From NCBI GenBank assembly GCA_002269645.1, contig NIVC01002225.1, positions 48,279 through 112,278 of the forward strand: a stretch of 64,000 nucleotides of DNA, given 5' to 3'. The translations under genes were made by a program, and so were the position numbers. Source of the DNA: Macrostomum lignano. Taxonomy: Eukaryota. Positions 1 to 63,705 of this stretch are shown here, piece after piece. Numbering within the stretch: position 1 is the first letter of the stretch; each line of letters begins with the position of its first letter. The notes below the pieces were generated by a model that ran no database searches, was not told the origin of the DNA, and was given only the letters and a program-made list of their open reading frames with translations.

Positions 1-407
1 AGAGGGTGAGAGGGAGAGAGGGAGAGAAGAGACGGGTTACAGAGAGATAGAAAAGCACAAATGCTAAGATGGGAAACCAGCAGACACATTGATGAGTGAC
101 AGACTGACATGCAGCTTGATACGATGAATTATTTAGCATTAGTAATAAGCAAATACATGTTCCTAAAAGCTCACCCGAGCAGTAACAAAGACAGTAATAG
201 ACAGGGAGATGCAGGACATCACAATAATGCAGATAGCATAGATTGTGTACTCCTCAATTAGCCACAGGGTGACGCTGAACAGTTGAAAAATGTAAAACGG
301 ATGCAGTCCCTGTGGTATTAGAAAAATGAGATTATTTGCCTATATTTCTACTCTAAGTAGAGAAATTAAAACAGTAAAATTTTATCAAAAGATTCAAAAT
401 GACTCGC

Positions 408-3400: not shown

Positions 3401-3443
3401 TCAATCCAGCTCATTGCTGCAGGCTAAATGAGAGCAAGAGGGA

Positions 3444-3492
<49 letters not shown>

Positions 3493-6071
3493 AATAGGAA
3501 TGAGAGAAGACAGGAGAGGCGAGAGGAAGATAAGAGGAGAAATGAGATGAGAGATAAGGTGAGAGAAAAAATTAGAGGAGAGAAAGGAGATAAGAGGAGA
3601 GAAGAGAAAAGGGCTAAGAAAACACACTGAGCAACATGTTAAATTTTCCACCCCAAAACCGGAGGTCAGCTTTTACTCAGATCTCAGCCCCAAGTGACGT
3701 CACTTTAACACGTTGCTGAGCGGGCCGGAGTTGCCGAACCCTATGCTGTAGATATACGAGTATTCCTATTTTTGACTATGGTCTGAAGTCATATGCATGG
3801 GAAAGACAAAAACAATTCTTGAGGCAGCTATGCATTCATCACGAGTATTTTTATAACTATAGCGACTGTAGTTAACTGTTGTTGAAGAAGGCTAGGCTAT
3901 TCAAGAAACACACAATAGTTAAAAAAGGTACTCACGGGGACTCCAGGACAGGAGCTGCTGTATAGGACAGCTGTAGAGCGCTGTAAAGTTTTGAGTGTTG
4001 TGTGGAGATGTAAATAGTCGACTGGACTTTTGGGTACATTATACTGAAATTATTATCTATGAGATTGAGACTCCTGTCTCACGAGACCAGGATTATAATC
4101 TACGAGACTGGGACTCTAAGCAGCAATCCAAGCGAAAAAAATTCAATGTGGCGCAAAGCATTCGGCTGCATCGTCTCACAACCAGCAAAGTGCTGACGGC
4201 AATTCCGCACATTTCGCCGACTGCTGAGCACATGCAAGCGCGCCAATCACACAGTGCACATCACACCTAAAGAGCTCACAGCATTGTCCAGACTAGTTGA
4301 AGATGCAGCAGCAGCAGCAGCAGCAGAGTCGCCATCAACACACGGTGACTTGGTTGAACATCTGGCCGAATGAAGTCGGACATTTTTGTCCGTTTTTGAG
4401 CCTGCAATACCGGACTTTCTCAGCCTGATGGGGAAGGGCAACGATTCGTGTGAACGGCTATTCTAAAAGAGCGCATGTTCTTTCTGTTCTATAATAATTC
4501 TAGCCTGTATATGTTCTATGATCCTAGTCTATAGACGTGCTATGATCCTAGTCTATAGACGTGCTATGATCCTGGTCTATAGACGTTCTATGATCCTGGT
4601 CTATAGACGTGCTATGATCCTGGTCTATAGACGTGCTATGATTCTAGTCTATAGACGTGCTATGATCTTGGTCTATAGACGTGCTATGATCCTGGTCTAT
4701 AGACGCTCTATGATCCTGGACGTTCTATGATCCTGGTCTATAGACGTTCTATGATCCTGGTCTATACACGTTCTATGATCCTGGTCTGTAGACGTTCTAT
4801 GATCCTGGTCTATAGACGTTCTATGATCCTGGTCTATGATCCTGGTCTATAGCTGTTCTATGATCCTGGTTTATAGACGTTCTATGATCCTGGTCTATAG
4901 ACGTTCTATGATCCTGGTCTATAGACGTTCTATGATCCTGGTCTATGATCCTGGTCTATAGCTGTTCTATGATCCTGGTTTATAGACGTTCTATGATCCT
5001 GGTCTATAGACGTTCTATGATCCTGGTCTATAGATGTCTTCTGAACCTGCTCAGCGAATAGTCCTTGCTTTAATTTAAATTTTTCACATTTTTCTGCTTC
5101 GATGCTAATCCACTCAAAAAACTTACTTAATGCCCGCTGTGCTGACAATCACAACATCTTCCACAAACAGCTGCTTGTACTGGTCCTGAAATTTTAAGTG
5201 CAAAATCAAATTTTTATGGCATGCGTGGATTGCATGCAATTTTGTTGTGTTGCGTGTTGAGTGCAAGAAATTGAGCAATCCTAATTAACATAAAATATTT
5301 AAATGTAATAATTATTATGCTCCAGTTCAGGTGACTTCGTGGTCACTAGTCATACATGGTTTCTAGAACACAAAATGCTAATCTCATGACCCAATTAAGA
5401 ATGAATTCTCAATCTAGCATGAACACTGGCTTTAATTGGTTTAAATCATAATATTTGCAAGAGGGCTATGAGGAAATTCTGTCCATTCTGTTGACTCCTG
5501 ATCGCATAAAATTGCATGAATACTGTATGCAGATATGCACTCATACACACCCTCACACAGTGGCATTGACTTTCAAATGATCAGGCATATATAAACTCTC
5601 TGTATCTTAGGAATTCGTTCTGAACTTAGACTACAAAGATTCAAAGAACCAGGTACATTCTGAGTGAAAAAATCAATAAACAAAATCAAGCAATTAGTTT
5701 TAGTAACTAAAAATGACTGCAAACTTTGCATTAAATATGAAAAATCAACTTTACATATTCAACTTTGAACTTCAACTTACTCTAACTAGAATGCTGTCAG
5801 CTTCATGCAGGGCACATGGAACTTGAGTACATTTTATATGCAGACGTGGCAGCCAAAAGAAGAGCAGTCGTAGCAGAAATAGTGTGCAACCATAGCCAAT
5901 ATAGGTGAGCACTGTTTTTACTGTGCTCTTCTTATAGCCAATTATTTTCTAAAACAGTAAGACAAAAATATAATAAGTTCAATTAAAATATAATAGCAAA
6001 AAATATATTTGTGCACTTACAGACTCATCATCTTCTCCTTTATTAATTGTGTCCTCCAAGATGCTTATCAT
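408..6071 (-). CDS. P5B-type cation/polyamine-transporting ATPase (ATP13A2/3-like), 5' exons; gene continues off the left edge
   Basis: Exons reconstructed by eye with consistent splice phases: 6071-6021 (MISILEDTINKGEDDES), 5948-5781 (KIIGYKKS...LRLLFFWLPRLHIKCTQVPCALHEADSILVR), 5185-5127 (DQYKQLFVEDVV), 718-636 (FRYFMHKKIKYVW), 549-408 (TGLDEAEA...YGENRVHIPLTPIWKLLV). These match N-terminal motifs I recall for ATP13A3-type proteins (INxGxEDE, IxGY, W-x-P, RYF-x-HKK-x-x-Y-x-W, GL...YGxN). Exon(s) between 5127 and 718 are unresolved; candidate 45-nt exon near 3936-3980. Confidence 0.85.
895..2740 (+). repeat. Purine-rich intronic minisatellite complex (GGTGAGATGGGGAGGG-type units, then 16-bp GAGAGGGAGAGTGGAT units)
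   Basis: Tandem repeats visible directly; they explain the Pro/Ser/Leu/His ORFs at 789-2884. Confidence 0.95.
3435..3490 (+). repeat. (GA)n microsatellite
   Basis: Seen directly. Confidence 0.95.
4510..5035 (+). repeat. 24-bp tandem repeat (CTATGATCCTGGTCTATAGACGTT) in an ATP13A intron
   Basis: Period 24 (ATG at 4518, 4542, ...). Confidence 0.95.
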
Positions 6072-24790: not shown

Positions 24791-25789
24791 ATAAGTGCAG
24801 ATAGAAATTTAGGAAGGTTACAACTTTTTCAATTTACATATTTATACACGCATGAAGATATATGGATGCATCATTGGCTAACCCGTTGGAGTTGTTGAGC
24901 AGTGACTATAATACTCGTATTCTGCGATGACGCCATCTTACACCTGTGCCTTAGATTGGGACAGGCGTTTTCAGAGACGACACGAAACTGGATAATTCCA
25001 GTCAGTGGCCACCGTTCAGAGCCGATAAGTTCAATGGTTGCTGACTCTGGATCGGCTGAAAACATAAAACGATTTTTCGCATAAAGTAGACGGTCAAAGA
25101 CTTTAGACTAGGAGCTAGTGGGAGTGAAGCATTTCAAGTAACCTTACCCTATATCTAATACAGCTAAAAAATTCCTCACCGTACAACAAATCCAAATTTC
25201 TTTGGATATGAAAAGGGTCATCAGATGTCCAATGGGCTGTGCATGTCGCGGAACGTATGCAATACGCGATGCCTGCTGTTTCAGTGTCAATGTAGTACTG
25301 GCCTAAGGTGGCTGTGCTTTTAGCCTACTCAATTTCAATGAAAATAAGTACAGTTTTTGCTTTGTACTAATTTTCGATAATAAATAATAAAAAACTCAAG
25401 CAGTTGAAGGTATGCAGTTACCTTCAAGTTGTCTGCACGACTTTCGCAAGCTGATTGAAACTCACAAATGACTGTGGTGTTATCATCTGTACGTCGAACA
25501 GACAGACTAATTTTAGCTTCTGGCAAGATCCTTCCGACCCAGTTATTAACAACTGCAGCAATACTGCGATCTGATTAATTTAAACAAGATAAAATGCTCA
25601 GTGTGAAGTTAGTTTTTTCATGGGGACATAAAGCTAAATATGCATGCTTAATTGCAAAAACTTCGTGAATCACTTACATGCTTTAGTATAGTAAAACTTG
25701 AATTGAAAACCAGTGTTTCCCGTGCTACTACTTGAAGTGGCGAATGAAATGCTGATCCCGGTTGAAAAAAATACTGGATTAGCCCATTG

Positions 25790-26525
25790 AAATTGGCCCG
25801 CTCATCGGCCACTTCGTGTCAGAAAAGCCCGCTCTAAAAGCCCGCTCATTTTTCCAAATCAACGAGTCTCTCAAATCGGCCCGTTCCACGGCCCGCTTCT
25901 GGGCCCGCTGGCTGGCCCGCTCACTGGCCCGTTCTAAACCGGCCCGCTGGCTGGCCCGTTGTTTGGCCCGCTGGCTGGCCCGTTGGTTGGCCCGCTCACT
26001 GGCCCACTCATTGACCCGTTCTAAACCGGCCTGCTGGCTGGCCCGCTGATTGGCCCCCTCATTGGCCCGTTCTAAACCGGCCCGCTGGTTGGCCCGTTGG
26101 TTGGCCCGCTGATTGGCCCGTTCTTAACCGGCCCGCTGGTTGGCCCGTTGGTTGGCCCGCTCATTGGCCCACTCATTGACCCGTTGTAAACCGGCCTGCT
26201 GGCTGGCCCGCTCATTGGCCCGTTCTAAACCAGCCCGCTGGCTGGCCCGTTGGTTGGCCCGCTGGTTGGCCCGTTCTAAACCGGCCCGCTGGTTGGCCCG
26301 TTGGTTGGCCCGCTGGTTGGCCCGCTCACTGGCCCACTCATTGACCCGTTGTAAACCGGCCTGCTGGCTGGCCCGCTCATTGGCCCGTTCTAAACCAGCC
26401 CGCTCATTGGCCCGTTCTAAACCGGCCCGCTCATTGGCCCGTTCTAAACCGGCCCGCTGGCTGTCCTGTTGGTTGGCCCGCTGGTTGGCCCGTTCTAAAC
26501 CGGCCCTCTGGTTGGCCCACTGAAC
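25790..26525 (+). repeat. Left subterminal array (GGCCCGCTGGTT and GGCCCGTTCTAAACC units)
   Basis: Seen directly; inverted relative to the right array. Confidence 0.92.
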
Positions 26526-26845
26526 GAACAAAAAAAATAAGTAAAGAAGCAAAATAAGCATGAGATTTCTAAGTCAGACCGATGAGCCGTACAATTAGCT
26601 TTTTTATAAAAACCGGGAATATACATCATCGGATCTGGTAAAAACAAAGAGATGTTAAGGTTAAAATTGAATACTAGTATTTTTTCATGGTGGCACGAAT
26701 AGCTAAAAGAGCTAATATAGCTAATAGAGCTAAAAGAGCTAATATATATAAAAGAGCAACCCTAGCCTCAGAGTCTATTCTCAACCCAAAGTAATGTTTG
26801 CCAGCATAGTGAAAAATTGTCACCACAATCGAGGCCTAGTCTCTA

Positions 26846-28564
26846 CTACTCGCTTTCCTCTTCATTTTCTGCGCAGGCGCCACTTTTCGCAGACGAACTC
26901 TCCCGATCCCGTACGGTCCTGGCTGTACGGCGGAAGACCTCGCCGAGTTCGGCGTCTGTGAATAGTTTTTTGTCCTCCTCTGAGACCAGTTTACTGGCCA
27001 GGTAGGACCGTATGGCCGCCTTCTTGGAGCTATCCAGCTCAACCCGGTTGGCCGCTTTCTCTCCTTTCACCTGTCGACCAGCCCAAGATGCGGTTCGCAG
27101 GTCTTGCTCAGGGCACACAGCAAGTATGACTAGCCGAATGGCTCGTCTGCGAATCTTGTTATTGTTTGCGGCTTTTCGCATTTCAACTGCTGCGGCTTCC
27201 AATTTTGTCAGGGCCAACGGACAAACCGTGACACCGGGAAATGCAGCTATCAGCGGCACACGTTTCGACGACTGGTTGCCCATCATGGAGGTCGATATAT
27301 TTGCGATTGCCGTCGCAATGGCGTGGCTCACAAATCCACTGGTAAGCTGCGATGACGTCGAGCCACTTGGCTCGGCATCGATGCCGATATCGGCAGCAGC
27401 TGATGACGACTCTCCGGGTGCAGTACTCGAACCAGCGACCAACGTTTCGTAGTCACTAATAGAGCGCACCAGACTTTCGAGGTGGCTGCATGATTCTGTA
27501 GTTCTACGTGCCACCTCGTTGGCCGACCGCGCCTGCGCCGTGACGAACCGTAGCGTCTCAAGTATCTGAGAATTCGCATGCATGGAACTTGCAAGACGGG
27601 TGTCATACTTTTGCAGCACGTCATCTTTCTGTGCCAGTTCCTGTTTCAGCTGCTCATTCTCAGACCGAATGGCCTCATTCTCAATCTTCAGGTTGGCTGC
27701 ATCAGTTTCAGCAGCCCCCCGCTTGTCCGTCTCTTCTCGATTTGCCTCACGTAGGTCACGACATTCGATGTCGAGGTTCCGGCAGCGCGGGCATCCGGCA
27801 TCAGGGTGATTTATAACGGGTTGCACGCGCCTATAGGCGCCTGCAGAGCCCGACCCCATTAAAGTTGCCGATTTGGCCAGGTTGTCCCGGGCAGCGTAGG
27901 CGGACTTCCTATCCGGAAAAGGCCCGGCTGTCAGGAAAGCGTCGAAAGTTTTTGCACTCGGGCTATGGCCAGTCCGTACTTGTACTTTAACGCCGACTGT
28001 TCGTGTTACGGGGTCCGGGTCGACGATGCACTTTTGGTCGATGGCCATAACTTTGCCGGTGTTAGTGTACGTGAGCACCCACCAAATAGCTTTGTGGATG
28101 ACCATGACACGGGGCGCCTTAGCCTTTGGTGGTCCACCGGCCCTATTGCGATGCCGCATCTCCTTTCTCGACTCTAGATCTGGCTCGCTCGATGAGTCAG
28201 ATAGAGATTCGCGATGCCGATGCCTATCGGCATTGGCTTCGGCTTTCCGTTTTGTAGTAGAGCCGGTCGGCTCCGCGGACACGGCCGTGCTCATATCGGA
28301 GCCGATTAGCGCCGTTGAAGTGGCGTCGTGGGCTTTAGGGAGCGTCGTGGGCTCATCTCTGCCGTCGCCATTCAGCTCAGCAGGATTTTCCTGGACGTCA
28401 GCAGCTGCAGTTGTTAGGCCAGTATTGGCATCTTTATCTTTCCGCTTCTCTTTTTCGGCCCGATTCTCGTGATCCCTCTTCTTATTCATTCTATCTGTCT
28501 TCTTTCCGTCTCCCATTATTCTGCAATGAGAGCGGGAAAGGTTTCTTTCTAAATGCGGTTTCAT
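26846..28564 (-). CDS. Transposon ORF4: charged N-terminus, coiled coil and C-terminal BEN-like domain
   Basis: Long open frame (ATG at 28564 or 28516). Heptad segment NLKIENEAIRSENEQLKQELAQKD. The C-terminal LVILAVCPEQDLRTASWAGRQ...RVELDSSKKAAIRSYL...LGEVFRRTAR resembles the BEN pattern (L..S..G....LD..K..AI) by eye. Confidence 0.7.
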   Translation of the reverse strand: MKPHLERNLSRSHCRIMGDGKKTDRMNKKRDHENRAEKEKRKDKDANTGLTTAAADVQENPAELNGDGRDEPTTLPKAHDATSTALIGSDMSTAVSAEPTGSTTKRKAEANADRHRHRESLSDSSSEPDLESRKEMRHRNRAGGPPKAKAPRVMVIHKAIWWVLTYTNTGKVMAIDQKCIVDPDPVTRTVGVKVQVRTGHSPSAKTFDAFLTAGPFPDRKSAYAARDNLAKSATLMGSGSAGAYRRVQPVINHPDAGCPRCRNLDIECRDLREANREETDKRGAAETDAANLKIENEAIRSENEQLKQELAQKDDVLQKYDTRLASSMHANSQILETLRFVTAQARSANEVARRTTESCSHLESLVRSISDYETLVAGSSTAPGESSSAAADIGIDAEPSGSTSSQLTSGFVSHAIATAIANISTSMMGNQSSKRVPLIAAFPGVTVCPLALTKLEAAAVEMRKAANNNKIRRRAIRLVILAVCPEQDLRTASWAGRQVKGEKAANRVELDSSKKAAIRSYLASKLVSEEDKKLFTDAELGEVFRRTARTVRDRESSSAKSGACAENEEESE

Positions 28565-28906
28565 ATGACATGCGTCATATGACGCAAGCATGCGTCAGTG
28601 TCATGCTAATGAAAGTAAGGAAGGATATTGAATTCCATAACGAAAAATGCAACGCCTGTGCATCTTCTATGTGCAATCGACGCTGACAAGTCGACGCAAG
28701 TATACTTTAGCTATGAGACGTTGATGGCATGGAAGCTGGCAAGCTACTGCTGGGAGAAGCGCTACTATAGTAGTACTCGCTACACTACTCATGACATTGA
28801 GCCGGCTGGCTCGACTAGAAGTATTTATATAAATAGATCTAGATCTAATAGAGTAGTTACAGTACAATATTGTCAATTATTAACAGTGACGTACAGCCTA
28901 TGCTGC

Positions 28907-29938
28907 CTACAGCTTCTTATCCCGTGTGTTAGACGGCCCGGCGCTAGCACCCGTCAGTGGACGCATGCGCCTCTTGCCTAACCTCATGGCCTCAAAGGGC
29001 GCTTCTGGCTGAGTGTCAGGCATTTCGATTTTAAAAAAGTTGGGGTCGCGCTTCTGCTGAGGCTGATTACTGCGGTGCCGCCCGTGCTCTTGCAGCCGTC
29101 TCTGCTTTGTACGAGGTGACAAATTCGAAAACCAGGCCTCACAGTCAGGGCAGCAGTGCGGGTCCAGTTCCTGCCGATCCGCCCGTTTTCGAACAACGCG
29201 TACGCAAGCGTAATTCTTTTGATTCGGCGGGTCAGGCATGCGGTTATACTCCGCGCGCAGTTTGTTCAAGTTCTCAGCCGGCTCGTAGTCTCGCGCCGCG
29301 GGCTGATCGTCACTGGCGACGTTCGCAGTCGAGCCAGCCGGCTCAATGTCGTTAAACAGAGACGGCGAACCGAGCTGGGTCTCGGCGTTGTAGCGAAGCT
29401 GATCGTCGTTGGCGTCGTTCGCAGTCGAGCCAGCCGGCTCAATGTCGTCAAACAGAGACGGCGAACCGAGCTGGGTCTCGGCGTTGTAGCGAAGCTGATC
29501 GTCGTTGGCGTCGTTCGCAGTCGAGCCAGCCGGCTCAATGTCGTCAAACAGAGACGGCGAACCGAGCTGGGTCTCGGCGTTGTAGCGAAGCTGATCGTCG
29601 TTGGCGTCGTTCGCAGTCGAGCCAGCCGGCTCAATGTCGTCAAACAGAGACGGCGAACCGAGCTGGGTCTCGGCGTTGTAGCGAAGCTGATCGTCGTTGG
29701 CGTCGTTCGCAGTCGAGCCAGCCGGCTCAATGTCGTCAAACAGAGACGGCGAACCGAGCTGGGTCTCGGCGTTGTAGCGAAGCTGATCGTCATAGGCGTC
29801 GTTCGCAGTCGAACCAGCCGGTAACCGGTAACCGATCAGGTCGACAAGAGTCGGCGACATAGTTCGCGCCACGTCTCGAAGGAGGTCATCCATGATGGCG
29901 GAGAAGTTAACTCCTCTAGGGCTCAGGTCGTTCGACAT
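28907..29938 (-). CDS. Transposon ORF3: 32-aa tandem repeats followed by a CtIP/Sae2-like C-terminal domain
   Basis: NYACVRVVRKRADRQELDPHCCPDCEAWFSNLSPRTKQRRLQEHGRHRSNQPQQKRDPNFFKIEMPDTQ aligns without gaps to human CtIP as recalled ([69 protein letters not shown]). Five-plus 96-bp repeats lie at 29328-29820. Confidence 0.82.
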   Translation of the reverse strand: MSNDLSPRGVNFSAIMDDLLRDVARTMSPTLVDLIGYRLPAGSTANDAYDDQLRYNAETQLGSPSLFDDIEPAGSTANDANDDQLRYNAETQLGSPSLFDDIEPAGSTANDANDDQLRYNAETQLGSPSLFDDIEPAGSTANDANDDQLRYNAETQLGSPSLFDDIEPAGSTANDANDDQLRYNAETQLGSPSLFNDIEPAGSTANVASDDQPAARDYEPAENLNKLRAEYNRMPDPPNQKNYACVRVVRKRADRQELDPHCCPDCEAWFSNLSPRTKQRRLQEHGRHRSNQPQQKRDPNFFKIEMPDTQPEAPFEAMRLGKRRMRPLTGASAGPSNTRDKKL

Positions 29939-29990
29939 GTCTGAAAAGCAAGTATATGTCGTCTGTTATGCACACGCAAGTTTGTCCGAC

Positions 29991-30089
29991 ACACATCTGA
30001 GCTTGGAGAATCAATACCTATCTATCTATCTATCTACCTATCTATCTACCTATCTATCTATCTATCTATCATCTATCTATCTATCTATC

Positions 30090-30152
<63 letters not shown>

Positions 30153-30240
30153 ATCTATCTATCTATCTACCTATCTATCTATCTATCTATCTATCATCTA
30201 TCTATCTATCATACACATCTGAGCTTGGAGAATCAATACC
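29991..30240 (+). repeat. (CTAT)n microsatellite flanked by a 28-bp direct repeat
   Basis: ACACATCTGAGCTTGGAGAATCAATACC at 29991-30018 and 30213-30240. Confidence 0.9.
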
Positions 30241-30731
30241 ATGCTGCTGGGCTGTGCAGTGGGAAATTGTTAACTATTTATTACTATTACGTTACTAGTA
30301 AGTAGAGACGCTTGACAAACTTGATTAGTGAACGAACGATGATTGACCTGATTGGCCTGTATACGCCACAAATCGTATATATATATATGTATATATGAGC
30401 AAAATAAGCAATATAAACTAAATAAGCAGTGCGAAAGCAATATAATCAATACAAAGGCAATGTAAGCAATATAAGCAGTATTAGCAATATGAGCAATATA
30501 AGCAATATGAGCCGACTGGCTCGATTTCAAAGGGCCAATTTGTCCAATTTCTCCAAATTGCCGTGCTCTTTCTAAAACGTGGCGGTCTTTGTACGGTTTA
30601 AGCGGAATCTAATCAGATTCAATAAACTCTATATTCTGTTATACTCTCTTAATTGTGGTGGGCAGAAACGACTAGTGATTGAAGCTGCGGCTAACTACAC
30701 GTTCCGGAATTACTAACGTGGCCTACATTAA

Positions 30732-31892
30732 TTACTTAAACCGCACATAGGCCGCCCACGTCCCTACAATGGCGACGGCCAGAGTCATGTATAGGACATT
30801 CGATTTATGTCCTAAGTACACCAGCCGGTACTCCTGGGCAGCTCGACCGCGTCGCCTTGACTTTTTCAGCACCTTGACCCGATTTTGCACCGGTGGCGTG
30901 ACACCGGCGGATCCGGCGTGCTCATTAACGGTGCTCACGGCTCGGTCGAAGATGGCCTGGGCGTCGAGCGACAACTCGGTCTTCGCGCCAGCCGGCGCGT
31001 CTACGATTCCGCTGTCTCTGAGGTGCGAATACAACGTGCGGACTGCATTAGTCCAGCACGTTGTTTCACATCCCCGGGACCACAGAAAGATAAAGACACA
31101 AACTAGTGTCAAGATGGCATTGCCCATGCTGTCCGAAAATAGTATGCTGTGTTCAGACTCATACTCCCGTAGTTTGTAAGAAGCAGCAGTCATGAACGTC
31201 TGCATATCTGTATGCCAGCAGTATGGCCAGTTTTTTCCATTCGCGTACAGCTCTCTGCACCGACCGCAAATGCCAGAGTAATTTCCCGTCGCGCCGAGGG
31301 TGCCTTCGGCCTGCTGAGCGGAATCGCTCAGAGGCTCGTTGTACAACGACATGTCGCGAAGCTGTTTGACTACTCCTGTGGCAGCAGACGCAGCTGGGAC
31401 ACAGGTCGAGCCGGTTGGCTCGACACGACCCGTCGCGCCGAGGGTGCCTTCGGCCTGCTGAGCGGAATCGCTCAGAGGCTCGTTGTACAACGACATGTCG
31501 CGAAGCTGTTTGACTACTCCTGTGGCAGCAGACGCAGCTGGGACACAGGTCGAGCCGGTTGGCTCGACACGACCCGTCGCGCCGAGGGTGCCTTCGGCCT
31601 GCTGAGCGGAATCGCTCAGAGGCTCGTTGTACAACGACATGTCGCGAAGCTGTTTGACTACTCCTGTGGCAGCAGACGCAGGAACACAGCTCGAGCCGAC
31701 TGGCTCAACTGTAGCTCCGGCGTCGTCACTACAGTCGTCGTCCCAGTTGCTGCAGGCGCGCGATTTAACTAGCCGTTGCTGCTCGGCATGGGCTGCGTGG
31801 ATGTCATCCTCACAGTCGTCGCAGTGAGAGGAGCGACAAAAAAACAATAGTCGGCGAACGCGAAGTATTCCCGCGAATTGCATTTGGGGCAT
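30732..31892 (-). CDS. Transposon ORF2: 386-aa protein of unknown function with ~3 x 48-aa repeats
   Basis: ATG-started open frame; 144-bp repeat period (31405, 31549); CDDC and CGRC motifs; basic patch KKSRRRGR; hydrophobic C-terminus. Confidence 0.7.
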   Translation of the reverse strand: MPQMQFAGILRVRRLLFFCRSSHCDDCEDDIHAAHAEQQRLVKSRACSNWDDDCSDDAGATVEPVGSSCVPASAATGVVKQLRDMSLYNEPLSDSAQQAEGTLGATGRVEPTGSTCVPAASAATGVVKQLRDMSLYNEPLSDSAQQAEGTLGATGRVEPTGSTCVPAASAATGVVKQLRDMSLYNEPLSDSAQQAEGTLGATGNYSGICGRCRELYANGKNWPYCWHTDMQTFMTAASYKLREYESEHSILFSDSMGNAILTLVCVFIFLWSRGCETTCWTNAVRTLYSHLRDSGIVDAPAGAKTELSLDAQAIFDRAVSTVNEHAGSAGVTPPVQNRVKVLKKSRRRGRAAQEYRLVYLGHKSNVLYMTLAVAIVGTWAAYVRFK

Positions 31893-32523
31893 GGTTGCTG
31901 GTCCGGCATTGTGATGTCTTAATCTTAATTTGTTTATTTGTCCTTAATTTGTACAAATTAATTTCTTTTGCTGGTACTTCTTTGTCAGTGGGTCGACTGA
32001 AATTAATGCGAAGTAGGTGCACGATTATTGGAACAAAAGGACAGCTGCGTACCGGTTGTAACCTACTATATTGTCAGGTAGAAATAAAGGCGTAAAGGAA
32101 GGCAACATATGGATATAGACGTCATGTGACCGACGTTTGTTACTAAATATAAATATAATTTCCTATGATACCACATAGCAATGTGCAGTAGTAAGCAGTA
32201 TAAGCAATATATATATTATATATAAAAGCAATAAAAGCAAAACACAGTTGAAGAAGGCATGCTGGAAAAGAGCAATTATGGCATATCCCGTCCCGTTTGA
32301 GCGAGGGTGTCCTCTAGCCCTCACCCCTTGTTGTAAACTGTAGTCATAAGTTTTGAATGAACAGGTGACATTTCTACTCAATTTAAAAAGCTTTAGAACT
32401 TTCGAATGTTTACTTACTATAGTGATGTGAGTTCTAAGAAATTATATTGCTTTACCAGAAAGCCTGTGCAACGATTTTTCCTTCTTATTGGGACACCCTA
32501 CGTACAATGAGTACATACAATTC

Positions 32524-35304
32524 TCACGCTGCGTAAGAAAACTGAATATGGGGGAGGAATGCTACGTAGCGGTCGTTCACACAACACGTAGCGAGTACGT
32601 CGTTAGCAGGGATTTCGAAGTAGTATTTGTCAACTGCGCAAAATGGATTGGCACGCAGGCGCCGAACGTGTGCGACTGAGCATCCGCCGTGGTCCGGTTC
32701 GCCAGTCAAGCGGTACAACGGATGATTGTCCTCGTGCGGCTCCACAGTCAGAAGGCGGCGTAGGCGAACCCATGCGCAATTGTCCCGGAGTTGAATTTCC
32801 TCAATTCGTGCGAATTCAAACGGCTGACGACAGTTAGGGATGAGGACAGTAACAAAGCACGAGGCGGCGCGCTGGTGGATCAGGCGAGGCAAGAATATTT
32901 CAATGCGTAGCCCGCTGGTCAGTACTGCTTTGCCATACCGTGTGTCACCGCCCGCCAATTGGCGGCGAATAGGATTGCGCAGTCGCACACCATCCGGCAG
33001 TCGAACCTCACCATTTGGTGGTCCCTCGCTGAAGATGTTGGGGAGTTGCAATTCGGCCATCATTTGCCTTCGCGCCAATTGGCGCTGTAGGAGGCCGGCA
33101 ACTTCGGTGTCAACATTCCTGGAGCCGTGAATTTTGGTGCGAAGATTCGCATGCGACGACTCAAACAAGCCCGCAGACATCCTCCACATTGGCCCGTATA
33201 AAGTTACGTACGATACAAAGTGCTCACAAACTTGGTGTGCATTGTACGTAAGGGCCATGTTGGAGTACATCTGAGGCAGCTGACTGTAAAAGTAGTGCAG
33301 AAGCCGGCTGGCTTTCATCACTTCCATTAGAGGCGCTCCATCCAATGTAAGCCAGAACATGGCCGTGGACAGTAGCTGAAGGTGCCAGTAGTAGCGGTCG
33401 GGCAGGATGCCTTCCATCACCATAGGGCCGTAGACGATTAACCATGCCTCAAGTTCGTGGCCCCGAAACATGCCGAGTTCATGGAAACTTCGGGGAGCAC
33501 GTTGATGAGACAGGGGTACGTGAATCCGCGAAGAGGCAAGGTCCACATCTGCACGTCGCGAAACTAGATTGGGGTTATGCGCGTGGTACATGTCTGGTTT
33601 CTTAGGATGAAACAGCTGTTTCAAAATCCAGTGAACGAGTCCAAGATAGCACTGATGAAGCAGACACGGTGGACACCCATGCATGTAGTCGAAACCGTTT
33701 AACTGGTCCAACACTGACACGCACATAACGCCCAGATAGTTGTCCTTGCCGACCGGGATGTTGTGCGCCAGTAGGCGCGTGTCTCGCAAGCTACGAGCGT
33801 GCGGTGTAATACAACCGACTGCGGTTGCCAGCGCAACCGCCTCTTCTTTGCCACTGACTGGGTACCGATTGGCACCCAATGATCTCTGCGTCTTCACATA
33901 GCAGTTGTCGCAGCCGAACTCTGCATTGTGACGCTTTAGACCGACAACCTCAGCTCTCTGTGGGGCATCCAAGACGAATAGGTACGGGTGCAGTCGAAGA
34001 AGACCAGGCGCGTCGCCTTCAGTGCCACCACCTGTGCTGTAGGTGATCCCGATAGACCGGAGCTCATTCAGCTCTCTAACAAGGCCGGGAAGGAAGGTGG
34101 ATGTCTTGACTTTCGACTTTGCAGCCCAGAAACCACATACGACGATGAAACGCGATTTCATTGCTTCGTGTACTTCGTTGATACTCAAGTACACTGGGCA
34201 CATTTCCATCAGCGCGTCTGCAAATACTGGAAAGCCGTCGATGTTCACAGTATACGACAGATCTTGCTTCAAGTGTAGCCGAACTGAACGCTTGAAATGC
34301 CGATACTCGTCGCAACTGGATACTGAGACAAAATTACGATCTTCAGATGACAAATCGACAGGGAAAGTTACGCTCTGTAGAAGCCGGCACTGTTCAATTA
34401 ACTGTCTGATTTGCAATTTAAAGTCGGTGGTATAAAACTTGGATACGCCGGCCGGCGACAGTTCCTTGTTACAATAAGTGCAATTTTCACGGTTCTGAGC
34501 CTGTGCTGACGTGACCTCAGCACTACAGGAGGAACAGAACAGTCGGGGTGGCGATGTAAAGTCGTTCGCGAATGCCTGGACTGTTTTCCGTAGTAAATAT
34601 ACACTACCAGGCAGGTTGCTACCGACTGGCACAGCTGCATGGAAGAGGCGAAGCAGGTCAGCTATGCCTTTCCTTGGCAGAGACTGGCGCTCGCTGAACA
34701 AATGCACATAGGCCGCAAACGAATCGTAGGTCAACGGAGAGTCTAGGAAAAGTGCGGCTCCATTTCTCCTACGCGGCTGCATATCCATAGCTTCTGGGTT
34801 ATGGGTGGCTCCATTGCCAACACACGGTACATCCTCATCCTCTGGTGGGCGGTCATCTTCAGTGAAGTCCTCACAATCGTCGCACTGCTCGATGGCGTCC
34901 AACGCCATTGGAGCGCCACTCCAATAGTCGTCATCTGGAGCTTCTTCGCCTGGTTCCTCAACGATAGATCTAGAAGATACGTCCTCATCGTCGTTGTCTG
35001 AATACTGCGAGCCGGTAGGCTCGACGACCATGGGAGTCTGGACGCCACTGCTACATCCACCTGTTGCCAATGCTGGCTGCCAGCTGCTGCCAACACTGGC
35101 TACACTGTTGCTTGTTTGCGCGTCATAAGTGGTTGGTACGTCATGAGTGGTCCGAGTTGCAGTTAGTAAATGGCTCACTGAAGCTTCTGCTCGTGTCGGA
35201 CGGGCTGTCGCCGCAACTGTCTGTCTGAGTGATTCTTTGAGTCGACTGAAGCGCCGTGCGATGGCAACTGACTTCTTGTCGAGCTCTTTTAGTCGTTCAA
35301 GTGA
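32524..35304 (-). CDS. CACTA/EnSpm (CMC)-type DDE transposase
   Basis: 884-aa ORF extendable to a splice acceptor at 35305 (possible ATG-ATG micro-exon 35382-35377). Motifs: CSSC..CTYC; NIDGFP (D1); LVRELNEL; VLDAPQRA (D2); HNAEFGCDNC; LLHQCYLG; FRGHELEAW; HLQLL; YNAHQVCEH; YGPMWRMSAGLFES (E). This layout is typical of animal EnSpm-like transposases. Confidence 0.88.
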   Translation of the reverse strand, partial: SLERLKELDKKSVAIARRFSRLKESLRQTVAATARPTRAEASVSHLLTATRTTHDVPTTYDAQTSNSVASVGSSWQPALATGGCSSGVQTPMVVEPTGSQYSDNDDEDVSSRSIVEEPGEEAPDDDYWSGAPMALDAIEQCDDCEDFTEDDRPPEDEDVPCVGNGATHNPEAMDMQPRRRNGAALFLDSPLTYDSFAAYVHLFSERQSLPRKGIADLLRLFHAAVPVGSNLPGSVYLLRKTVQAFANDFTSPPRLFCSSCSAEVTSAQAQNRENCTYCNKELSPAGVSKFYTTDFKLQIRQLIEQCRLLQSVTFPVDLSSEDRNFVSVSSCDEYRHFKRSVRLHLKQDLSYTVNIDGFPVFADALMEMCPVYLSINEVHEAMKSRFIVVCGFWAAKSKVKTSTFLPGLVRELNELRSIGITYSTGGGTEGDAPGLLRLHPYLFVLDAPQRAEVVGLKRHNAEFGCDNCYVKTQRSLGANRYPVSGKEEAVALATAVGCITPHARSLRDTRLLAHNIPVGKDNYLGVMCVSVLDQLNGFDYMHGCPPCLLHQCYLGLVHWILKQLFHPKKPDMYHAHNPNLVSRRADVDLASSRIHVPLSHQRAPRSFHELGMFRGHELEAWLIVYGPMVMEGILPDRYYWHLQLLSTAMFWLTLDGAPLMEVMKASRLLHYFYSQLPQMYSNMALTYNAHQVCEHFVSYVTLYGPMWRMSAGLFESSHANLRTKIHGSRNVDTEVAGLLQRQLARRQMMAELQLPNIFSEGPPNGEVRLPDGVRLRNPIRRQLAGGDTRYGKAVLTSGLRIEIFLPRLIHQRAASCFVTVLIPNCRQPFEFARIEEIQLRDNCAWVRLRRLLTVEPHEDNHPLYRLTGEPDHGGCSVAHVRRLRANPFCAVDKYYFEIPANDVLATCCVNDRYVAFLPHIQFSYAA

Positions 35305-35711
35305 CTGAAAATGAAGAAATTGAATACCTGTGTGACTAGGAGAGAATCCGTACTAAAATTGTTAATTAACAAATACCATCATTCTACTATCAGTTTAAAT
35401 CAGTTTGCTATCTTAGCCCAAGAGCCAACAAAGGGCGAAGCAATGGTTTCACACTAAACTGGGTGATATCTGAAGTACATACGTCACAACGTAGCGCGAT
35501 ATACAAATTGCTGTGGGCGTATAAGGCGATAAAAATAAATAAAATTGACACACTCATTGTACATGTCATCATGAAATTTGTGTATGCACAGTTTATTGGA
35601 CAGCATTAGTGCTCTACAAATCAAATAATTGCCCGAGCGCCAAGACACCGCAAAAGTTTACACGTACAAGTTTATACACCATTTGATAAGATTATCACGT
35701 TCACAACAAGT

Positions 35712-36540
35712 CAGCGGGCCGGTTTAGAACGGACCATTGAGCGGGCCAACCAGCGGGCCAACCAGCGGGCCGGTTTAGAACGGGCCAACCAGCGGGCCAA
35801 CCAGCGGGCCAACCAGCGGGCCAACTAGTGGGCCGAGCAGCGGGCCGGTTTAGATCGGGCCAGTGAGCGGGCCAACCAGCGGGCCGTGCAGCGGGCCGGT
35901 TTAGAACGGACCATTGAGCGGGCCAACCAGCGGGCCAACCAGCGGGCCGGTTTAGAACGGGCCAGTGAGCGGGCCAACTAGTGGGCCGAGCAGCTGGCCG
36001 GTTTAGAACGGACCATTGAGCGGGCCAACCAGCGGGCCAACCAGCGGGCCGGTTTAGAACGGGCCAACCAGCGGGCCAGTGAGCGGGCCAACTAGTGGGC
36101 CGAGCAGCTGGCCGGTTTAGAACGGGCCATTGAGCGGGCCAACCAGCGGGCCAACCAGCGGGCCGGTTTAGAACGGGCCAACCAGCGGGCCAGTGAGCGG
36201 GCCAACTAGTGGGCCGAGCAGCTGGCCGGTTTAGAACGGGCCATTGAGCGGGCCAACCAACGGGCCAACCAGCGGGCCGGTTTAGAACGGGCCAACCAGC
36301 GGGCCAACCAGTGGGCCGCGCAGCGGGCCGGTTTAGAACGGGCCAGTGAGCGGGCCAACCAGCGGGCTAATCAGCGGGCCGATCTGCGGATCGGTTTCGA
36401 GCGGGCCATTAGCGGGCTAATCAGCGGGCTTCAGAGCAGGCCGAGTTTCAGCGGGCCAATTTGTTGTAAAAGGCCTGTAATACGGGCCGATTCGCTTCGG
36501 CCCGCTAATGGCCCGCTCAAAAGCCCACTGAGGCCCGCTA
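35712..36540 (-). repeat. Right subterminal array (AACCAGCGGGCC and GGTTTAGAACGGGCC units)
   Basis: Reverse complement of the left-array units. Confidence 0.92.
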
Positions 36541-61963: not shown

Positions 61964-62132
61964 TTCCAAAGTCTTGAAAGAGAAATTAAAGAAGTGTTGC
62001 ATTTTAACTACAGAAAAACTGGGTCTTCAAGAACTGCCTATTTTCAGTAAAATTAGTCTGCAGTAGGTAAGGGGAAGACAGATTGAAAACGGACCCCAGA
62101 TATTTCGGTTAAGTTGCGCATTTGATGAATAC

Positions 62133-63465: not shown

Positions 63466-63705
63466 GAACAGGGGAGATTAGATACGGGAACAGGGGAGAT
63501 TAGATACGGGAACAGGGGAGATTAGATACGGGAACAGGGGAGATTAGATACGGGAACAGGGGAGATTAGATACGGGAACAGGGGAGATTAGATACGGGAA
63601 TAGGGGAGATTAGATACGGGAACAGGGGAGATTAGATACGGGAATAGGGGAGATTAGATACGGGAACAGGGGAGATTAGATACGGGAACAGGGGCGATTA
63701 GATAT
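63466..63705 (+). repeat. 22-bp tandem repeat (ATTAGATACGGGAACAGGGGAG)
   Basis: Period 22, about 10-11 copies. Confidence 0.95.

What the first reader, a model, noticed from the sequence alone, without database searches (positions are those of the whole stretch)
27357..35025. GAGCC-N4-GGCTC palindrome recurs throughout the element and reads E-P-x-G-S in all four ORFs
Seen: 13 perfect copies near 27357, 28257, 28796, 29328/29424/29520/29616/29712, 30506, 31405/31549/31690 and 35006, at about 7 independent loci, often extended to GTCGAGCC-N4-GGCTCGAC. Two copies (28796, 30506) are intergenic. All 11 coding copies are in the same frame (AEPTGS, AEPSGS, IEPAGS, VEPTGS). A 10-base motif is expected about 0.01 times per 10.8 kb at uniform composition, and I noticed none outside the element. 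The tandem protein repeats of ORF2 and ORF3 each carry one copy. Inference: a coding-compatible operator array for an element-encoded dimeric protein (BEN proteins such as Insensitive and BANP bind palindromes), or a self-spreading mini-palindrome.
Basis: partly seen in the sequence, partly recalled or inferred. Interest (0 to 1): 0.85.

Follow-up and report, generated by a model that had tools for sequence, protein, structure and literature searches.

The report
Coding-embedded DNA palindrome in flatworm transposon
A 10.8-kb cut-and-paste transposon of the flatworm Macrostomum lignano carries 13 copies of one short DNA palindrome, written through the coding sequence of all four of its genes and into two spacers; the evidence says the constraint is on the DNA, not on the peptide, and the likeliest (unproven) role is a set of binding sites for a dimeric protein.

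Summary
There are 13 perfect GAGCC-N4-GGCTC sites (0.02 expected), all inside one element and none in the other 53 kb. All 11 coding copies read E-P-x-G-S.

The element (window 25757-36555, genes on the minus strand) is a CACTA/EnSpm-like DNA transposon of Macrostomum lignano. It has 13-bp TIRs, a 3-bp TSD, subterminal arrays of a 12-bp unit and four ORFs.

The constraint is on DNA, not peptide:
- Two copies lie in stop-riddled spacers.
- Every EPxGS uses the palindromic codons.
- Homologous proteins of diverged subfamilies lack the peptide.
- Synonymous-codon permutation removes most of the element's palindromes (18 observed, 4.8 expected).

The motif is better written G(A/C)GCC-RRYY-GGC(T/G)C. 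Spacing is strictly 4, the arms always change symmetrically, and the centre is purine/pyrimidine-symmetric. A subfamily with a 36%-identical transposase has its own recurrent palindrome (GTCAwTGAC).

The best reading is an array of two-fold-symmetric sites for a homodimeric DNA-binding protein. ORF4 (coiled coil plus a helical domain) is the candidate; its BEN assignment is weak, resting on fold only with no HMM match. Rivals are hairpin or cruciform structure, palindrome-generating template switching, host AP-2 sites, and a peptide motif. Independent loci number about six, not seven.

The parts
25757..36555 (-). Whole transposon (10.8 kb), CACTA/EnSpm-like, with its genes on the minus strand
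   Evidence: Homology with other genomic copies starts and ends exactly here. It is flanked by the 3-bp TSD GAT at 25754-25756 and 36556-36558.
25757..25769 (+). Terminal inverted repeat CCCGGTTGAAAAA (low-coordinate end)
   Evidence: The same terminus is found in 8 other copies, each with a different 3-bp TSD.
36543..36555 (-). Terminal inverted repeat (high-coordinate end), reverse complement of the other
25823..26522 (.). Subterminal array of the 12-bp unit GGCCCGCTGGTT (higher-order periods 51/63/153)
   Evidence: It is inverted relative to the array at the other end. It does not contain the GAGCC palindrome.
35712..36429 (.). Subterminal array of the same 12-bp unit in the opposite orientation (AGCGGGCCAAYC)
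32524..35031 (-). ORF1, transposase. The first ATG is at 35031 and the frame stays open up to 35352.
   Evidence: 4940 relatives in the representative library; those relatives hit Pfam Transposase_21 (tnp2) and DUF1258. There are 58 six-frame matches in the genome at 34-100% identity. The first ATG lies 9 nt before the palindrome.
30732..31892 (-). ORF2, 386 aa, function unknown. Its N-terminal half is 3 units of 144 bp, each very palindrome-dense.
   Evidence: It occurs only in this family. The AF2 model is unusable (pLDDT 37.5).
28907..29938 (-). ORF3, 343 aa: 5.4 units of 96 bp followed by a CtIP/Sae2-like C-terminal domain
   Evidence: PF08573 scores 28.4 bits against a cut-off of 19.8. 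Homologues lie next to many diverged transposases.
26846..28591 (-). ORF4, 581 aa: disordered N-terminus, coiled coil at residues 268-387, disordered linker, helical C-terminal domain at 458-570
   Evidence: AF2 model. Weak Foldseek similarity to BEN domains 8yzs and 4ix7. No Pfam BEN hit.
35009..35022 (.). Palindrome GAGCCTACCGGCTC in ORF1, codons 4-8 counted from the first ATG (VEPTGS)
   Evidence: Conserved in 10 copies. In two old copies exactly the 4-bp spacer is deleted.
31408..31706 (.). Three palindromes in the ORF2 repeat units (31693, 31552, 31408). The latter two have 8-bp arms: GTCGAGCCaaccGGCTCGAC.
30509..30522 (.). Non-coding palindrome GAGCCGACTGGCTC in the ORF2-ORF3 spacer
   Evidence: In copies C255, C85 and C278 it is the centre of a perfect 17+4+17 palindrome; this copy lost the right arm by a deletion of about 55 bp.
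29331..29728 (.). Five palindromes, one per 96-bp ORF3 repeat unit (IEPAGS)
28793..28816 (.). Non-coding palindrome (28799-28812) inside a 24-nt perfect inverted copy of the ORF3 repeat segment GACATTGAGCCGGCTGGCTCGACT
   Evidence: inverted repeats I1-I5
28260..28273 (.). Palindrome in ORF4 (AEPTGS, residues 107-112, predicted disordered)
27360..27373 (.). Palindrome in ORF4 (AEPSGS, residues 407-412, disordered linker). Extended form: CGAGCCAagTGGCTCG.
33765..33778 (.). Second class, GCGCC-N4-GGCGC. Further copies at 33072-33085 (GCGCCAATTGGCGC), 30985-30998 and 27827-27840, together using all three reading frames.
28561..28597 (.). Cluster of three overlapping perfect palindromes across the ORF4 start codon (TGACGCAtgctTGCGTCA, TGCGTCATATGACGCA, TCATATGACgcatGTCATATGA)

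Best explanation
The recurring GAGCC-N4-GGCTC is a DNA-level cis-element of one family of CACTA/EnSpm-like transposons in Macrostomum lignano. It is not a functional peptide. Its fuller form is the 14-bp two-fold-symmetric site G(A/C)GCC-RRYY-GGC(T/G)C.

It is laid into spacers and, by codon choice, into coding sequence. Where disorder could be checked (both ORF4 sites) it sits in a predicted disordered segment, a context in which the reading E-P-x-G-S should be harmless.

Most likely the roughly six loci (13 copies) form an array of binding sites for a homodimeric sequence-specific DNA-binding protein. The best candidate is the element's own ORF4 (long coiled coil plus a C-terminal helical, weakly BEN-like domain). 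The array would mark or regulate the interior of the element, for example by autoregulating its four genes or helping assemble the transposition complex. It is distinct from the 12-bp subterminal repeats at the ends.

Shown: the DNA-level constraint, the symmetry rules, the family specificity and the anatomy of the element. Inferred: that a protein binds the sites, which protein it is, and what binding achieves.
For: 1. Enrichment and location. 13 sites against 0.02 expected, all inside the element, about 1000 times the genome density.

2. DNA rather than peptide.
- Two copies lie in spacers with stops in all frames.
- All five coding loci use GAG/GGC/TCN, each with a probability of about 0.16-0.2 given the ORFs' own codon usage, and no EPxGS uses other codons.
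- Transposases of 20 diverged loci and CtIP-like homologues of two other subfamilies lack EPxGS.
- Independent loci split 5 coding to 1-2 non-coding, matching the 72:28 split by length.

3. Codon choice makes palindromes. Perfect palindromes with arms of at least 7 in the four ORFs number 18, against 4.8 +/- 2.0 (maximum 11 of 200) after permuting synonymous codons.

4. Duplex-site geometry.
- GCC-N4-GGC occurs 22 times (17 distinct contexts) against 1-6 at spacings 1-3 and 5-9; spacing 0 (GCCGGC) gives 13, 9 distinct, partly from motif sites whose spacer begins GGC.
- The spacer is RRYY in 4 of 6 independent GAGCC loci and 7 of 13 distinct spacers, against a background of 6-10%.
- Solo half-sites are at chance level.

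5. No RNA signature. One-mismatch stems show 1 sense G.U against 4 A.C. Rfam finds nothing.

6. Family specificity.
- No diverged subfamily locus has the motif or GCC-N4-GGC enrichment.
- The subfamily at locus L026 has its own palindrome, GTCAwTGAC, 8 times against 0.16 expected. This is the pattern expected when an element-encoded binder and its sites co-evolve.

7. Candidate binder. ORF4 has a 120-residue coiled coil and a C-terminal helical domain whose only specific Foldseek matches are BEN-DNA complexes.
Against: - No binding data exist.
- The BEN assignment fails the Pfam HMM, and the fold match is not significant (E about 1, single-sequence model).
- Arms never form hybrids: flank +-1 is complementary in 17 of 17 GCC-N4-GGC sites and +-2 in 15 of 17, although the base itself varies. 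A single homodimer with a loose half-site should give hybrids, so two specificities or base pairing must be invoked.
- Several sites carry locus-specific symmetric extensions (8+4+8, 7+2+7, 17+4+17). The L026 palindromes have variable but symmetric flanks. A core-reading protein does not need either feature.
- The element is rich in many unrelated perfect palindromes (22 observed, 4.0 expected). One binder cannot explain that.
- All five coding loci share one frame (P about 0.01 if frames were free). The DNA model explains this only through tolerance of E-P-x-G-S in disordered regions.
Confidence: 0.4

Rival explanations
1. Hairpin or cruciform element. The palindromes act as intrastrand stem-loops in single-stranded DNA, supercoiled DNA or the mRNAs. 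A conserved upper stem (GAGCC/GGCTC) sits on a four-base loop, and the lower stems are free to vary as long as they pair. They would be recognised or processed by a structure-specific factor. This could connect to the CtIP/Sae2-like protein that this transposon superfamily encodes.
For: - Arm positions +-1 and +-2 co-vary symmetrically with no hybrids.
- Stems extend in a locus-specific way to 8, 7 and 17 bp.
- The difference between ORF2 units 1 and 2 lengthens the arms from 5 to 8 bp.
- The L026 subfamily shows a conserved core with variable symmetric flanks.
- There is a general excess of perfect palindromes.
- The RNA stem-loop of the core is predicted at -8.6 kcal/mol, and the extended forms reach -21 to -31.
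- ORF3 carries a CtIP/Sae2 C-terminal domain. From my own knowledge, Sae2/CtIP with Mre11 processes hairpin-capped ends.
Against: - The arms are invariant in sequence at six loci while the loop varies. That is the opposite of most protein-recognised hairpins.
- The loop is biased to RRYY, which is a duplex symmetry and not a loop feature.
- There are no G.U pairs and no sense-strand bias.
- Five-bp arms are too short to extrude as a cruciform.
- Rfam finds nothing.
- Palindrome richness does not track the presence of the CtIP-like gene across subfamilies.
Confidence: 0.2
2. Mutational by-product. Repeated repair synthesis of a cut-and-paste element is prone to intrastrand template switching and fold-back priming. 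That process perfects quasi-palindromes and copies short hairpin-containing patches, so palindromes accumulate without any function.
For: - Perfect palindromes are about 5-fold enriched, while one-mismatch stems are near expectation (6 found).
- The palindromes are diverse and occur in coding and non-coding DNA.
- The spacer copy at 28799 is an exact 24-nt inverted copy of the ORF3 segment.
- The 14-mer at 30509 is identical to that of the first ORF2 unit.
- One old copy pair lost exactly the 4-bp spacer.
- AAGTATACTT and AAATATATTT differ by a symmetric double change between the young and old copies.
- The flanking genome is only slightly enriched.
Against: - It does not explain why one core (GAGCC) recurs at six loci with different flanks and spacers.
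- It does not explain why the GCC-N4-GGC seeds themselves are about 6-fold enriched at one spacing only.
- It does not explain why the centre is RRYY rather than either fully paired or random.
- Several sister subfamilies with the same lifestyle show no enrichment (L010, L017, L022, L024, L029).
Confidence: 0.2
3. Host transcription-factor sites. The GCC-N4-GGC core is a consensus for AP-2 family homodimers. The element would have accumulated AP-2 sites as internal enhancers to drive expression of its genes in a particular host cell type.
For: - GCCNNNNGGC is given as the AP-2 consensus in PMC8602670.
- The genome encodes AP-2 domain genes (PF03299, 33 exon matches above the cut-off).
- Spacing is strict and the site is two-fold symmetric.
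Against: - The conserved site is 5+5, not 3+3, and the symmetric outer bases are not part of the cited consensus.
- The N3 spacing is not enriched (4 against 22).
- The first spacer base is never C and the last never G in 17 sites. From my recollection of AP-2 matrices, GCCC..GGGC is preferred.
- Other subfamilies in the same host do not use the site.
- Genome-wide, the motif barely exceeds its controls once repeat copies are allowed for.
Confidence: 0.1
4. Short linear peptide motif. [A/I/V]-E-P-x-G-S-[T/S] is a docking or modification motif shared by the four element proteins. The DNA palindrome would be a coincidence of codon usage.
For: - All coding copies are in one frame (P about 0.01 for five loci).
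- The motif occurs in all four proteins.
- Both ORF4 copies lie in predicted disorder.
- A preceding aliphatic residue and a following Thr are frequent. At 28260 the Thr is kept with non-palindromic codons (TCT ACT).
Against: - Two perfect copies lie in non-coding DNA. My own estimate of the chance of this is of order 1e-6.
- Invariant codons at five loci have a probability of about 1e-4.
- The peptide is absent from homologous proteins of other subfamilies.
- The GCGCC-N4-GGCGC class occupies all three frames.
- The synonymous-permutation test shows a DNA-level bias.
Confidence: 0.05

Closest known systems
En/Spm (CACTA) transposons with TnpA-binding 12-bp subterminal motifs
   Same: Cut-and-paste element with a tnp2-type transposase, a 3-bp TSD, arrays of a 12-bp unit in inverted orientation at both ends, and additional element-encoded proteins. 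Short sequence motifs serve as cis-sites for element proteins.
   Different: The termini are CCCGG..., not CACTA. The palindrome studied here is not in the subterminal arrays but is scattered through the interior, mostly inside coding sequence. It is a two-fold-symmetric interrupted palindrome, not a 12-bp asymmetric unit. The accessory genes (CtIP-like, coiled-coil protein, ORF2) are not TnpA.
BEN-domain factors binding palindromes (Insensitive CCAATTGG, BANP TCTCGCGAGA)
   Same: Homodimeric recognition of short palindromes. The ORF4 C-terminal helical domain gives its only specific Foldseek matches to the BEN-DNA complexes 8yzs and 4ix7. Two sites of the wider class are literally GCCAATTGGC.
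   Different: There is no BEN HMM match on ORF4 or anywhere in the genome. The fold match is not significant. The dominant site, GAGCC-RRYY-GGCTC, is not a known BEN site. Binding is untested.
AP-2 (TFAP2/APTF) binding sites GCC-N3/4-GGC
   Same: The same GCC-N4-GGC core, two-fold symmetry and homodimeric reader. The host has AP-2 genes.
   Different: Two further symmetric bases are fixed on each side. Only the N4 spacing is used. The site is family-specific within one host.
Dual-use (overlapping) codes: regulatory DNA motifs embedded in exons, and palindromic elements inserted in-frame in genes (e.g. Rickettsia palindromic elements)
   Same: A nucleic-acid-level element coexists with an open reading frame and is translated into a tolerated peptide.
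   Different: Here the element is only 14 bp. It has no flanking insertion signature, sits in a eukaryotic transposon, and recurs in all of the element's genes in one frame.
Quasi-palindrome template-switch mutagenesis
   Same: It produces perfect short palindromes and short inverted patches, as seen at 28793-28816 and in the arm extensions.
   Different: It is a mutational process with no sequence preference. It does not predict one recurrent core, a single spacing or an RRYY centre.

Membership tests
CACTA/EnSpm (CMC superfamily) DNA transposon | Transposase of the tnp2 / Transposase_21 type | tested here: met
   ORF1 itself has no Pfam hit. Its relatives at E of 1e-29 to 1e-43 hit PF02992 Transposase_21, several above the cut-off, and DUF1258. 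Membership is therefore by transitive homology.
CACTA/EnSpm (CMC superfamily) DNA transposon | 3-bp target-site duplication | tested here: met
   The TSD is GAT here. Six other copies show TAT, AAA, TAG, TTA, AGG and TGA.
CACTA/EnSpm (CMC superfamily) DNA transposon | Termini beginning CACTA/CACTG | tested here: not met
   The TIR is CCCGGTTGAAAAA.
CACTA/EnSpm (CMC superfamily) DNA transposon | Subterminal arrays of short repeats in inverted orientation at the two ends | tested here: met
   TRF reports about 35 and 55 tandem copies of a 12-bp unit (GGCCCGCTGGCT; GGCCCGCTGGTT in part of the array) at the low- and high-coordinate ends, in opposite orientation.
BEN domain (PF10523) for the ORF4 C-terminus | Match to the BEN profile | tested here: not met
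   No hit at E<=0.1 on the whole protein. No hit at E<=10 on the isolated domain. PF10523 finds nothing in the six-frame genome, although the controls did not ring either.
BEN domain (PF10523) for the ORF4 C-terminus | All-alpha fold superposable on solved BEN domains | tested here: inconclusive
   Foldseek matches the NACC1 BEN domain 8yzs_A (probability 0.60, TM target 0.43) and the Insv BEN domain 4ix7_A (probability 0.33, TM target 0.41), both at E about 1. The model is single-sequence, with domain pLDDT 64-83.
BEN domain (PF10523) for the ORF4 C-terminus | Sequence-specific binding to the palindrome | not testable with these tools
   This needs EMSA, DAP-seq or SELEX.
AP-2 transcription-factor binding site | GCC-N3/4-GGC core | tested here: met
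   22 GCC-N4-GGC sites. The consensus is as cited in PMC8602670. The N3 form is not enriched.
AP-2 transcription-factor binding site | Host encodes the factor | tested here: met
   PF03299 matches above the cut-off at about 13 loci.
AP-2 transcription-factor binding site | Occupancy by the factor | not testable with these tools
   No ChIP or DAP data are available.
Short linear peptide motif (SLiM) | Lies in intrinsically disordered segments | tested here: met
   ORF4 residues 107-112 and 407-412 fall in segments with pLDDT<50. The ORF2 and ORF3 copies lie in low-complexity repeats, but disorder there was not established (the ORF2 model is unusable; ORF3 and ORF1 were not modelled).
Short linear peptide motif (SLiM) | Conserved as a peptide, independent of codons, in homologous proteins | tested here: not met
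   No EPxGS occurs in the transposases of 20 diverged loci or in the CtIP-like homologues of L027, L029 and L030. Within the family every instance uses the same codons.
Short linear peptide motif (SLiM) | No reason to occur in non-coding DNA | tested here: not met
   Perfect copies occur at 28799 and 30509, in spacers with stops in all frames.
Structured RNA or hairpin element | Pairing kept through compensatory changes | tested here: inconclusive
   Flanks +-1 and +-2 always change symmetrically and the arms extend. However, the stem sequence is invariant at six loci, there are no G.U pairs and no strand bias, and Rfam has no match.
SAE2/CtIP C-terminal domain (ORF3, context only) | Match to PF08573 above the curated cut-off | tested here: met
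   28.4 bits against 19.8, covering CxxC...RHR...NFF..MPDTQ.

The most novel reading that the evidence does not exclude
Some lineages of this flatworm CACTA-like superfamily keep a 'palindrome code'. Dozens of perfect short DNA palindromes with lineage-specific cores are written through their own genes by synonymous codon choice. The cores are GAGCC-RRYY-GGCTC here and GTCAwTGAC in a sister lineage. The palindromes would act as hairpin or cruciform or dimer-binding landmarks for element-encoded factors, possibly coupled to the superfamily's CtIP/Sae2-like protein. That would be a transposon-internal cis-system of a kind not yet described.
Probability: 0.15. Interest if true: 0.8.

Novelty: new variant of a known kind. 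Interest (0 to 1): 0.58.

Why it matters
If the sites are bound by an element protein, this would be a clear animal example of a transposon carrying its cis-regulatory or assembly sites inside its own coding sequence. Codon choice and the tolerated peptide would both be shaped by the DNA motif. The system would then be tractable for studying overlapping codes and the co-evolution of transposon-encoded binders with their sites across subfamilies in one genome.

M. lignano is a transgenic model organism. An active multi-gene CACTA-like family with intact copies, defined ends and candidate regulatory sites is also of practical interest.

The CtIP/Sae2-like accessory gene conserved across the superfamily is a separate lead on how such elements handle the DNA breaks they make.

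Tried and rejected
- **Wider flanks of 17 diverged subfamily loci.** The accessory regions of most other subfamilies, the ORF4 paralogues (C557, C2235, C2582) and the GCGCCTACCGGCGC repeat family could therefore not be read.
- **Motif versus flank conservation among copies.** The copies are too similar (97-100%) to give power. Against the old copies (about 6% diverged), arm positions overall are not more conserved: 36 of 371 differ, against 145 of 2768 elsewhere.
- **ORF4 homologues.** The 5.8-billion-protein search returned none, and PDB sequence searches of ORF4 and ORF1 returned nothing useful.
- **ORF2 structure.** Mean pLDDT was 37.5, which is unusable, so no fold search was run.
- **Rfam.** Nothing at E<=1.
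- **Link between palindromes and deletion breakpoints.** Breakpoints lie 70-155 bp from the sites, so the idea was rejected.
- **Link between the palindrome and the subterminal 12-mer or TIR.** Neither contains GAGCC/GGCTC pairs, so this was rejected.
- **Correlation of palindrome richness with the CtIP-like gene across subfamilies.** None was seen.
- **Literature.** Nothing was found on M. lignano transposons of this type or on EnSpm with CtIP.
Full report
**Observation**

A pattern search finds exactly 13 perfect GAGCC-N4-GGCTC sites in the 64-kb window. They start at 27360, 28260, 28799, 29331/29427/29523/29619/29715, 30509, 31408/31552/31693 and 35009. Dinucleotide-preserving shuffles give 0.02 sites. 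None lies outside 27.3-35.1 kb.

The window is contig C2225 of a 764-Mb assembly. A 100%-identical UniRef entry identifies the organism as Macrostomum lignano. Genome-wide the pattern occurs 888 times, against 572 for the reversed control. That is about 1.2 per Mb, against about 1200 per Mb in the element.

On the minus strand every coding copy reads [A/I/V]-E-P-x-G-S in the same frame. The copies at 28799 and 30509 lie in AT-rich spacers with stops in all frames. The corrections are given below.

**What the element is**

Comparison with other genomic copies puts the element at window 25757-36555. It has 13-bp terminal inverted repeats (CCCGGTTGAAAAA) and a 3-bp target-site duplication. The duplication is GAT here and differs in each of six other copies. 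Both ends carry arrays, in inverted orientation, of a 12-bp unit (consensus GGCCCGCTGGCT, GGCCCGCTGGTT in part of the array; TRF counts about 35 and 55 copies).

ORF1 has no direct Pfam hit. It has 4940 relatives in the representative library, and those relatives hit Transposase_21 (tnp2) and DUF1258. The genome holds at least 58 six-frame matches, forming many subfamilies at 34-50% identity, most with open frames. Full, near-full and internally deleted copies of this family exist. This is a young CACTA/EnSpm-like cut-and-paste family, except that its termini are not CACTA.

The other three ORFs:
- **ORF3** ends in a CtIP/Sae2 C-terminal domain (28.4 bits against a cut-off of 19.8). Homologues of that domain sit beside many diverged transposases.
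- **ORF4** is predicted as disordered, then a 120-residue coiled coil, then disordered, then a helical C-terminal domain.
- **ORF2** occurs only in this family. Its model is unusable.

**DNA or peptide?**

Five lines of evidence favour DNA.

1. Two perfect copies are non-coding.
2. Given the ORFs' own codon usage, an EPxGS peptide would spell the palindrome with a probability of about 0.16-0.2. All five independent coding loci do so, and no EPxGS uses other codons.
3. The peptide is not a conserved feature of the proteins. Transposases of 20 diverged loci lack it. CtIP-like homologues in three other loci have different N-terminal repeats, sharing only a ...T-L-G-S-P motif.
4. Permuting synonymous codons within each ORF, which keeps both the protein and the codon usage, drops perfect palindromes with arms of at least 7 from 18 to 4.8 +/- 2.0 (maximum 11 of 200).
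5. Independent loci split between coding and non-coding DNA roughly as sequence length does.

What the DNA model does not predict is that all five coding loci use one frame (P about 0.01). The least costly explanation is that E-P-x-G-S is a tolerated insert in disordered segments; both ORF4 copies lie in predicted disorder, while disorder at the ORF1-3 copies was not tested. A dual constraint cannot be excluded.

**Anatomy of the motif**

The core is GCC-N4-GGC. It occurs 22 times (17 distinct contexts) in the 9.2-kb interior, against 1-6 at spacings 1-3 and 5-9; spacing 0 (GCCGGC) gives 13, partly from the motif's own GGC-initial spacers.

The two bases outside the core are symmetric. Flank +-1 is complementary in 17 of 17 sites and +-2 in 15 of 17, while +-3 is at chance. 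The classes are:
- GAGCC/GGCTC (six independent loci)
- GCGCC/GGCGC (four loci, using all three reading frames)
- single AAGCC, CCGCC and ATGCC palindromes

There is no hybrid such as GAGCC-N4-GGCGC. In the genome at large such hybrids are as common as composition predicts (815 + 772 sites). The symmetry is therefore a property of the element's sites.

The spacer is not random. It is RRYY in 4 of 6 independent GAGCC loci (P about 2e-4) and in 7 of 13 distinct spacers, against a background of 6-10%. The site is therefore best written G(A/C)GCC-RRYY-GGC(T/G)C, a 14-bp two-fold-symmetric duplex site. Isolated half-sites are at chance frequency.

**Features that point beyond a simple binding site**

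- Several sites have extra, locus-specific symmetric arms. ORF2 units have 8+4+8, ORF4b has 7+2+7, and copies C255, C85 and C278 have a perfect 17+4+17 palindrome at the equivalent of 30509. The window copy lost the right arm of that one by a deletion.
- ORF2 units 1 and 2 differ by changes that lengthen the arms from 5 to 8 bp.
- The element interior holds 22 distinct perfect palindromes with arms of at least 7, against 4.0 +/- 1.6 in shuffles. Flanking genome is near expectation.
- Some sister subfamilies are enriched too (L015, L026, L027, L028). Others are not (L010, L017, L022, L024, L029).
- Locus L026 (transposase 36% identical) has its own recurrent palindrome, GTCAwTGAC. It occurs 8 times against 0.16 expected, in coding and non-coding DNA, with flanks that vary but stay symmetric.
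- The spacer copy at 28799 is an exact 24-nt inverted copy of the ORF3 repeat segment. At least one copy therefore arose by a short templated inversion, and independent loci number about six.

**RNA?**

Stems with one mismatch show no excess of sense-strand G.U (1 against 4 A.C). The stems are invariant while the loops vary. Rfam finds nothing. I see no evidence for an RNA-level element, though the core would fold (-8.6 kcal/mol).

**Who might read the site?**

ORF4 is the best element-encoded candidate. It has a long coiled coil for dimerisation and a C-terminal helical domain. The only specific Foldseek matches of that domain are BEN-DNA complexes: NACC1 8yzs (probability 0.60) and Insv 4ix7 (probability 0.33). 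Both are at E about 1 and come from a single-sequence model. The Pfam BEN profile does not match ORF4, nor anything in the genome's six-frame translation.

A host reader is possible. GCCNNNNGGC is the AP-2 consensus (PMC8602670) and the genome encodes AP-2 genes. Against this, the fixed outer bases, the absence of N3 sites and the family specificity fit AP-2 poorly.

**Verdict**

The finding is real and is a DNA-level, family-specific palindrome embedded in coding sequence. I rank the readings as follows:
- an array of sites for a homodimeric DNA-binding protein, 0.4
- a hairpin or cruciform element, 0.2
- a by-product of palindrome-generating template switching, 0.2
- host AP-2 sites, 0.1
- a peptide motif, 0.05

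The first three are not mutually exclusive. A selected core with neutral, templated outward growth of the arms would account for all the features.

Relative to known systems this is a new variant: cis-sites of a CACTA-like transposon placed inside its own genes. A fuller 'palindrome code' remains possible but unproven.

Noticed in passing
window 28907-29290 (ORF3 C-terminus); also L029:4252-5058, L030, L027: The transposon encodes a CtIP/Sae2-like C-terminal domain (CxxC...RHR...NFF..MPDTQ; PF08573 above the cut-off). Homologues at 42-61% identity lie just downstream of many diverged transposases of the same superfamily. The gene looks like a conserved accessory gene, and its N-terminal repeats share a T-L-G-S-P motif.
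   Followed up: partly
L026 (G000:C1620:133687-138978), positions 265, 2488, 2977, 3517, 3617, 3700, 4824, 5238: A subfamily with a 36%-identical transposase carries its own recurrent palindrome, GTCAwTGAC (8 copies against 0.16 expected). The flanking bases differ from site to site but are symmetric. The sites are both inside and outside the transposase ORF.
   Followed up: partly
window 26531-35701: The element interior is generally rich in perfect short palindromes of many sequences (22 distinct with arms of at least 7, against 4.0 expected). The excess survives a synonymous-codon permutation test (18 against 4.8). The 144-bp ORF2 repeat unit alone holds five palindromes.
   Followed up: yes
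window 33072-33085 and 32952-32965: Two 14-bp perfect palindromes lie 120 bp apart inside the transposase ORF: GCGCCAATTGGCGC and CCGCCAATTGGCGG. From memory, their CCAATTGG centre is the published site of the BEN-solo factor Insensitive. A related subfamily has TAGCCAATTGGCTA (L048:95).
   Followed up: no
window 28561-28597: Three overlapping perfect palindromes built on GACGCA/TGCGTC and CATATG straddle the ORF4 start codon. The same GCGTCA..TGACGC theme recurs in L026.
   Followed up: no
G000:C255, C85 and C278, at the equivalent of window 30509: In three other copies the spacer site is the centre of a perfect 38-bp palindrome, CCCTTTGAAATCGAGCCagtcGGCTCGATTTCAAAGGG. It is followed by a module of about 60 bp (GGGACGGGATATGCCATAATTGCTC...) that also occurs downstream of ORF1 (window about 32240-32300). 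The window copy and C1111 have deleted the right arm and the module.
   Followed up: partly
window 25823-26522 and 35712-36429: TRF reports about 35 and 55 tandem copies of a 12-bp unit (GGCCCGCTGGCT/GGCCCGCTGGTT) at the two ends of the element, in inverted orientation. This is the likely binding array for the transposition proteins. The arrays read as long spurious ORFs.
   Followed up: partly
window 35029-35031: The first ATG of the transposase frame lies only 9 nt upstream of the palindrome (MVVEPTGS...). The frame is open for another 107 codons upstream, and a TTTTCAG acceptor-like site lies at about 35305. The true 5' end (spliced or trans-spliced) is therefore unresolved. UniRef fuses a copy of this ORF to a 'guanylate cyclase domain-containing protein' model (P0001).
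   Followed up: no
genome-wide: Other repeat families carry related palindromes. One has a pair, GAGCCTCTGGGCTC and GAGCCAGGAGGCTC, about 430 bp apart on many contigs. GCGCCTACCGGCGC occurs on at least 10 contigs and has the same TACC spacer as the ORF1 site but with GCGCC arms. GCGCC-N4-GGCGC is 2.5 times its control genome-wide.
   Followed up: no
G000:C16 and C3783 (old copies), at the equivalent of window 35009: Two degenerate copies lost exactly the 4-bp spacer of the ORF1 site (GAGCCGGCTC). Many differences between old and young copies are CpG to TpG/CpA changes.
   Followed up: no
window 1-4000, 40000-45000, 62000-64000: These stretches have extreme strand composition (GC skew up to 0.63, AT skew up to 0.88). 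They are presumably satellite or simple-repeat blocks flanking the element's neighbourhood.
   Followed up: no
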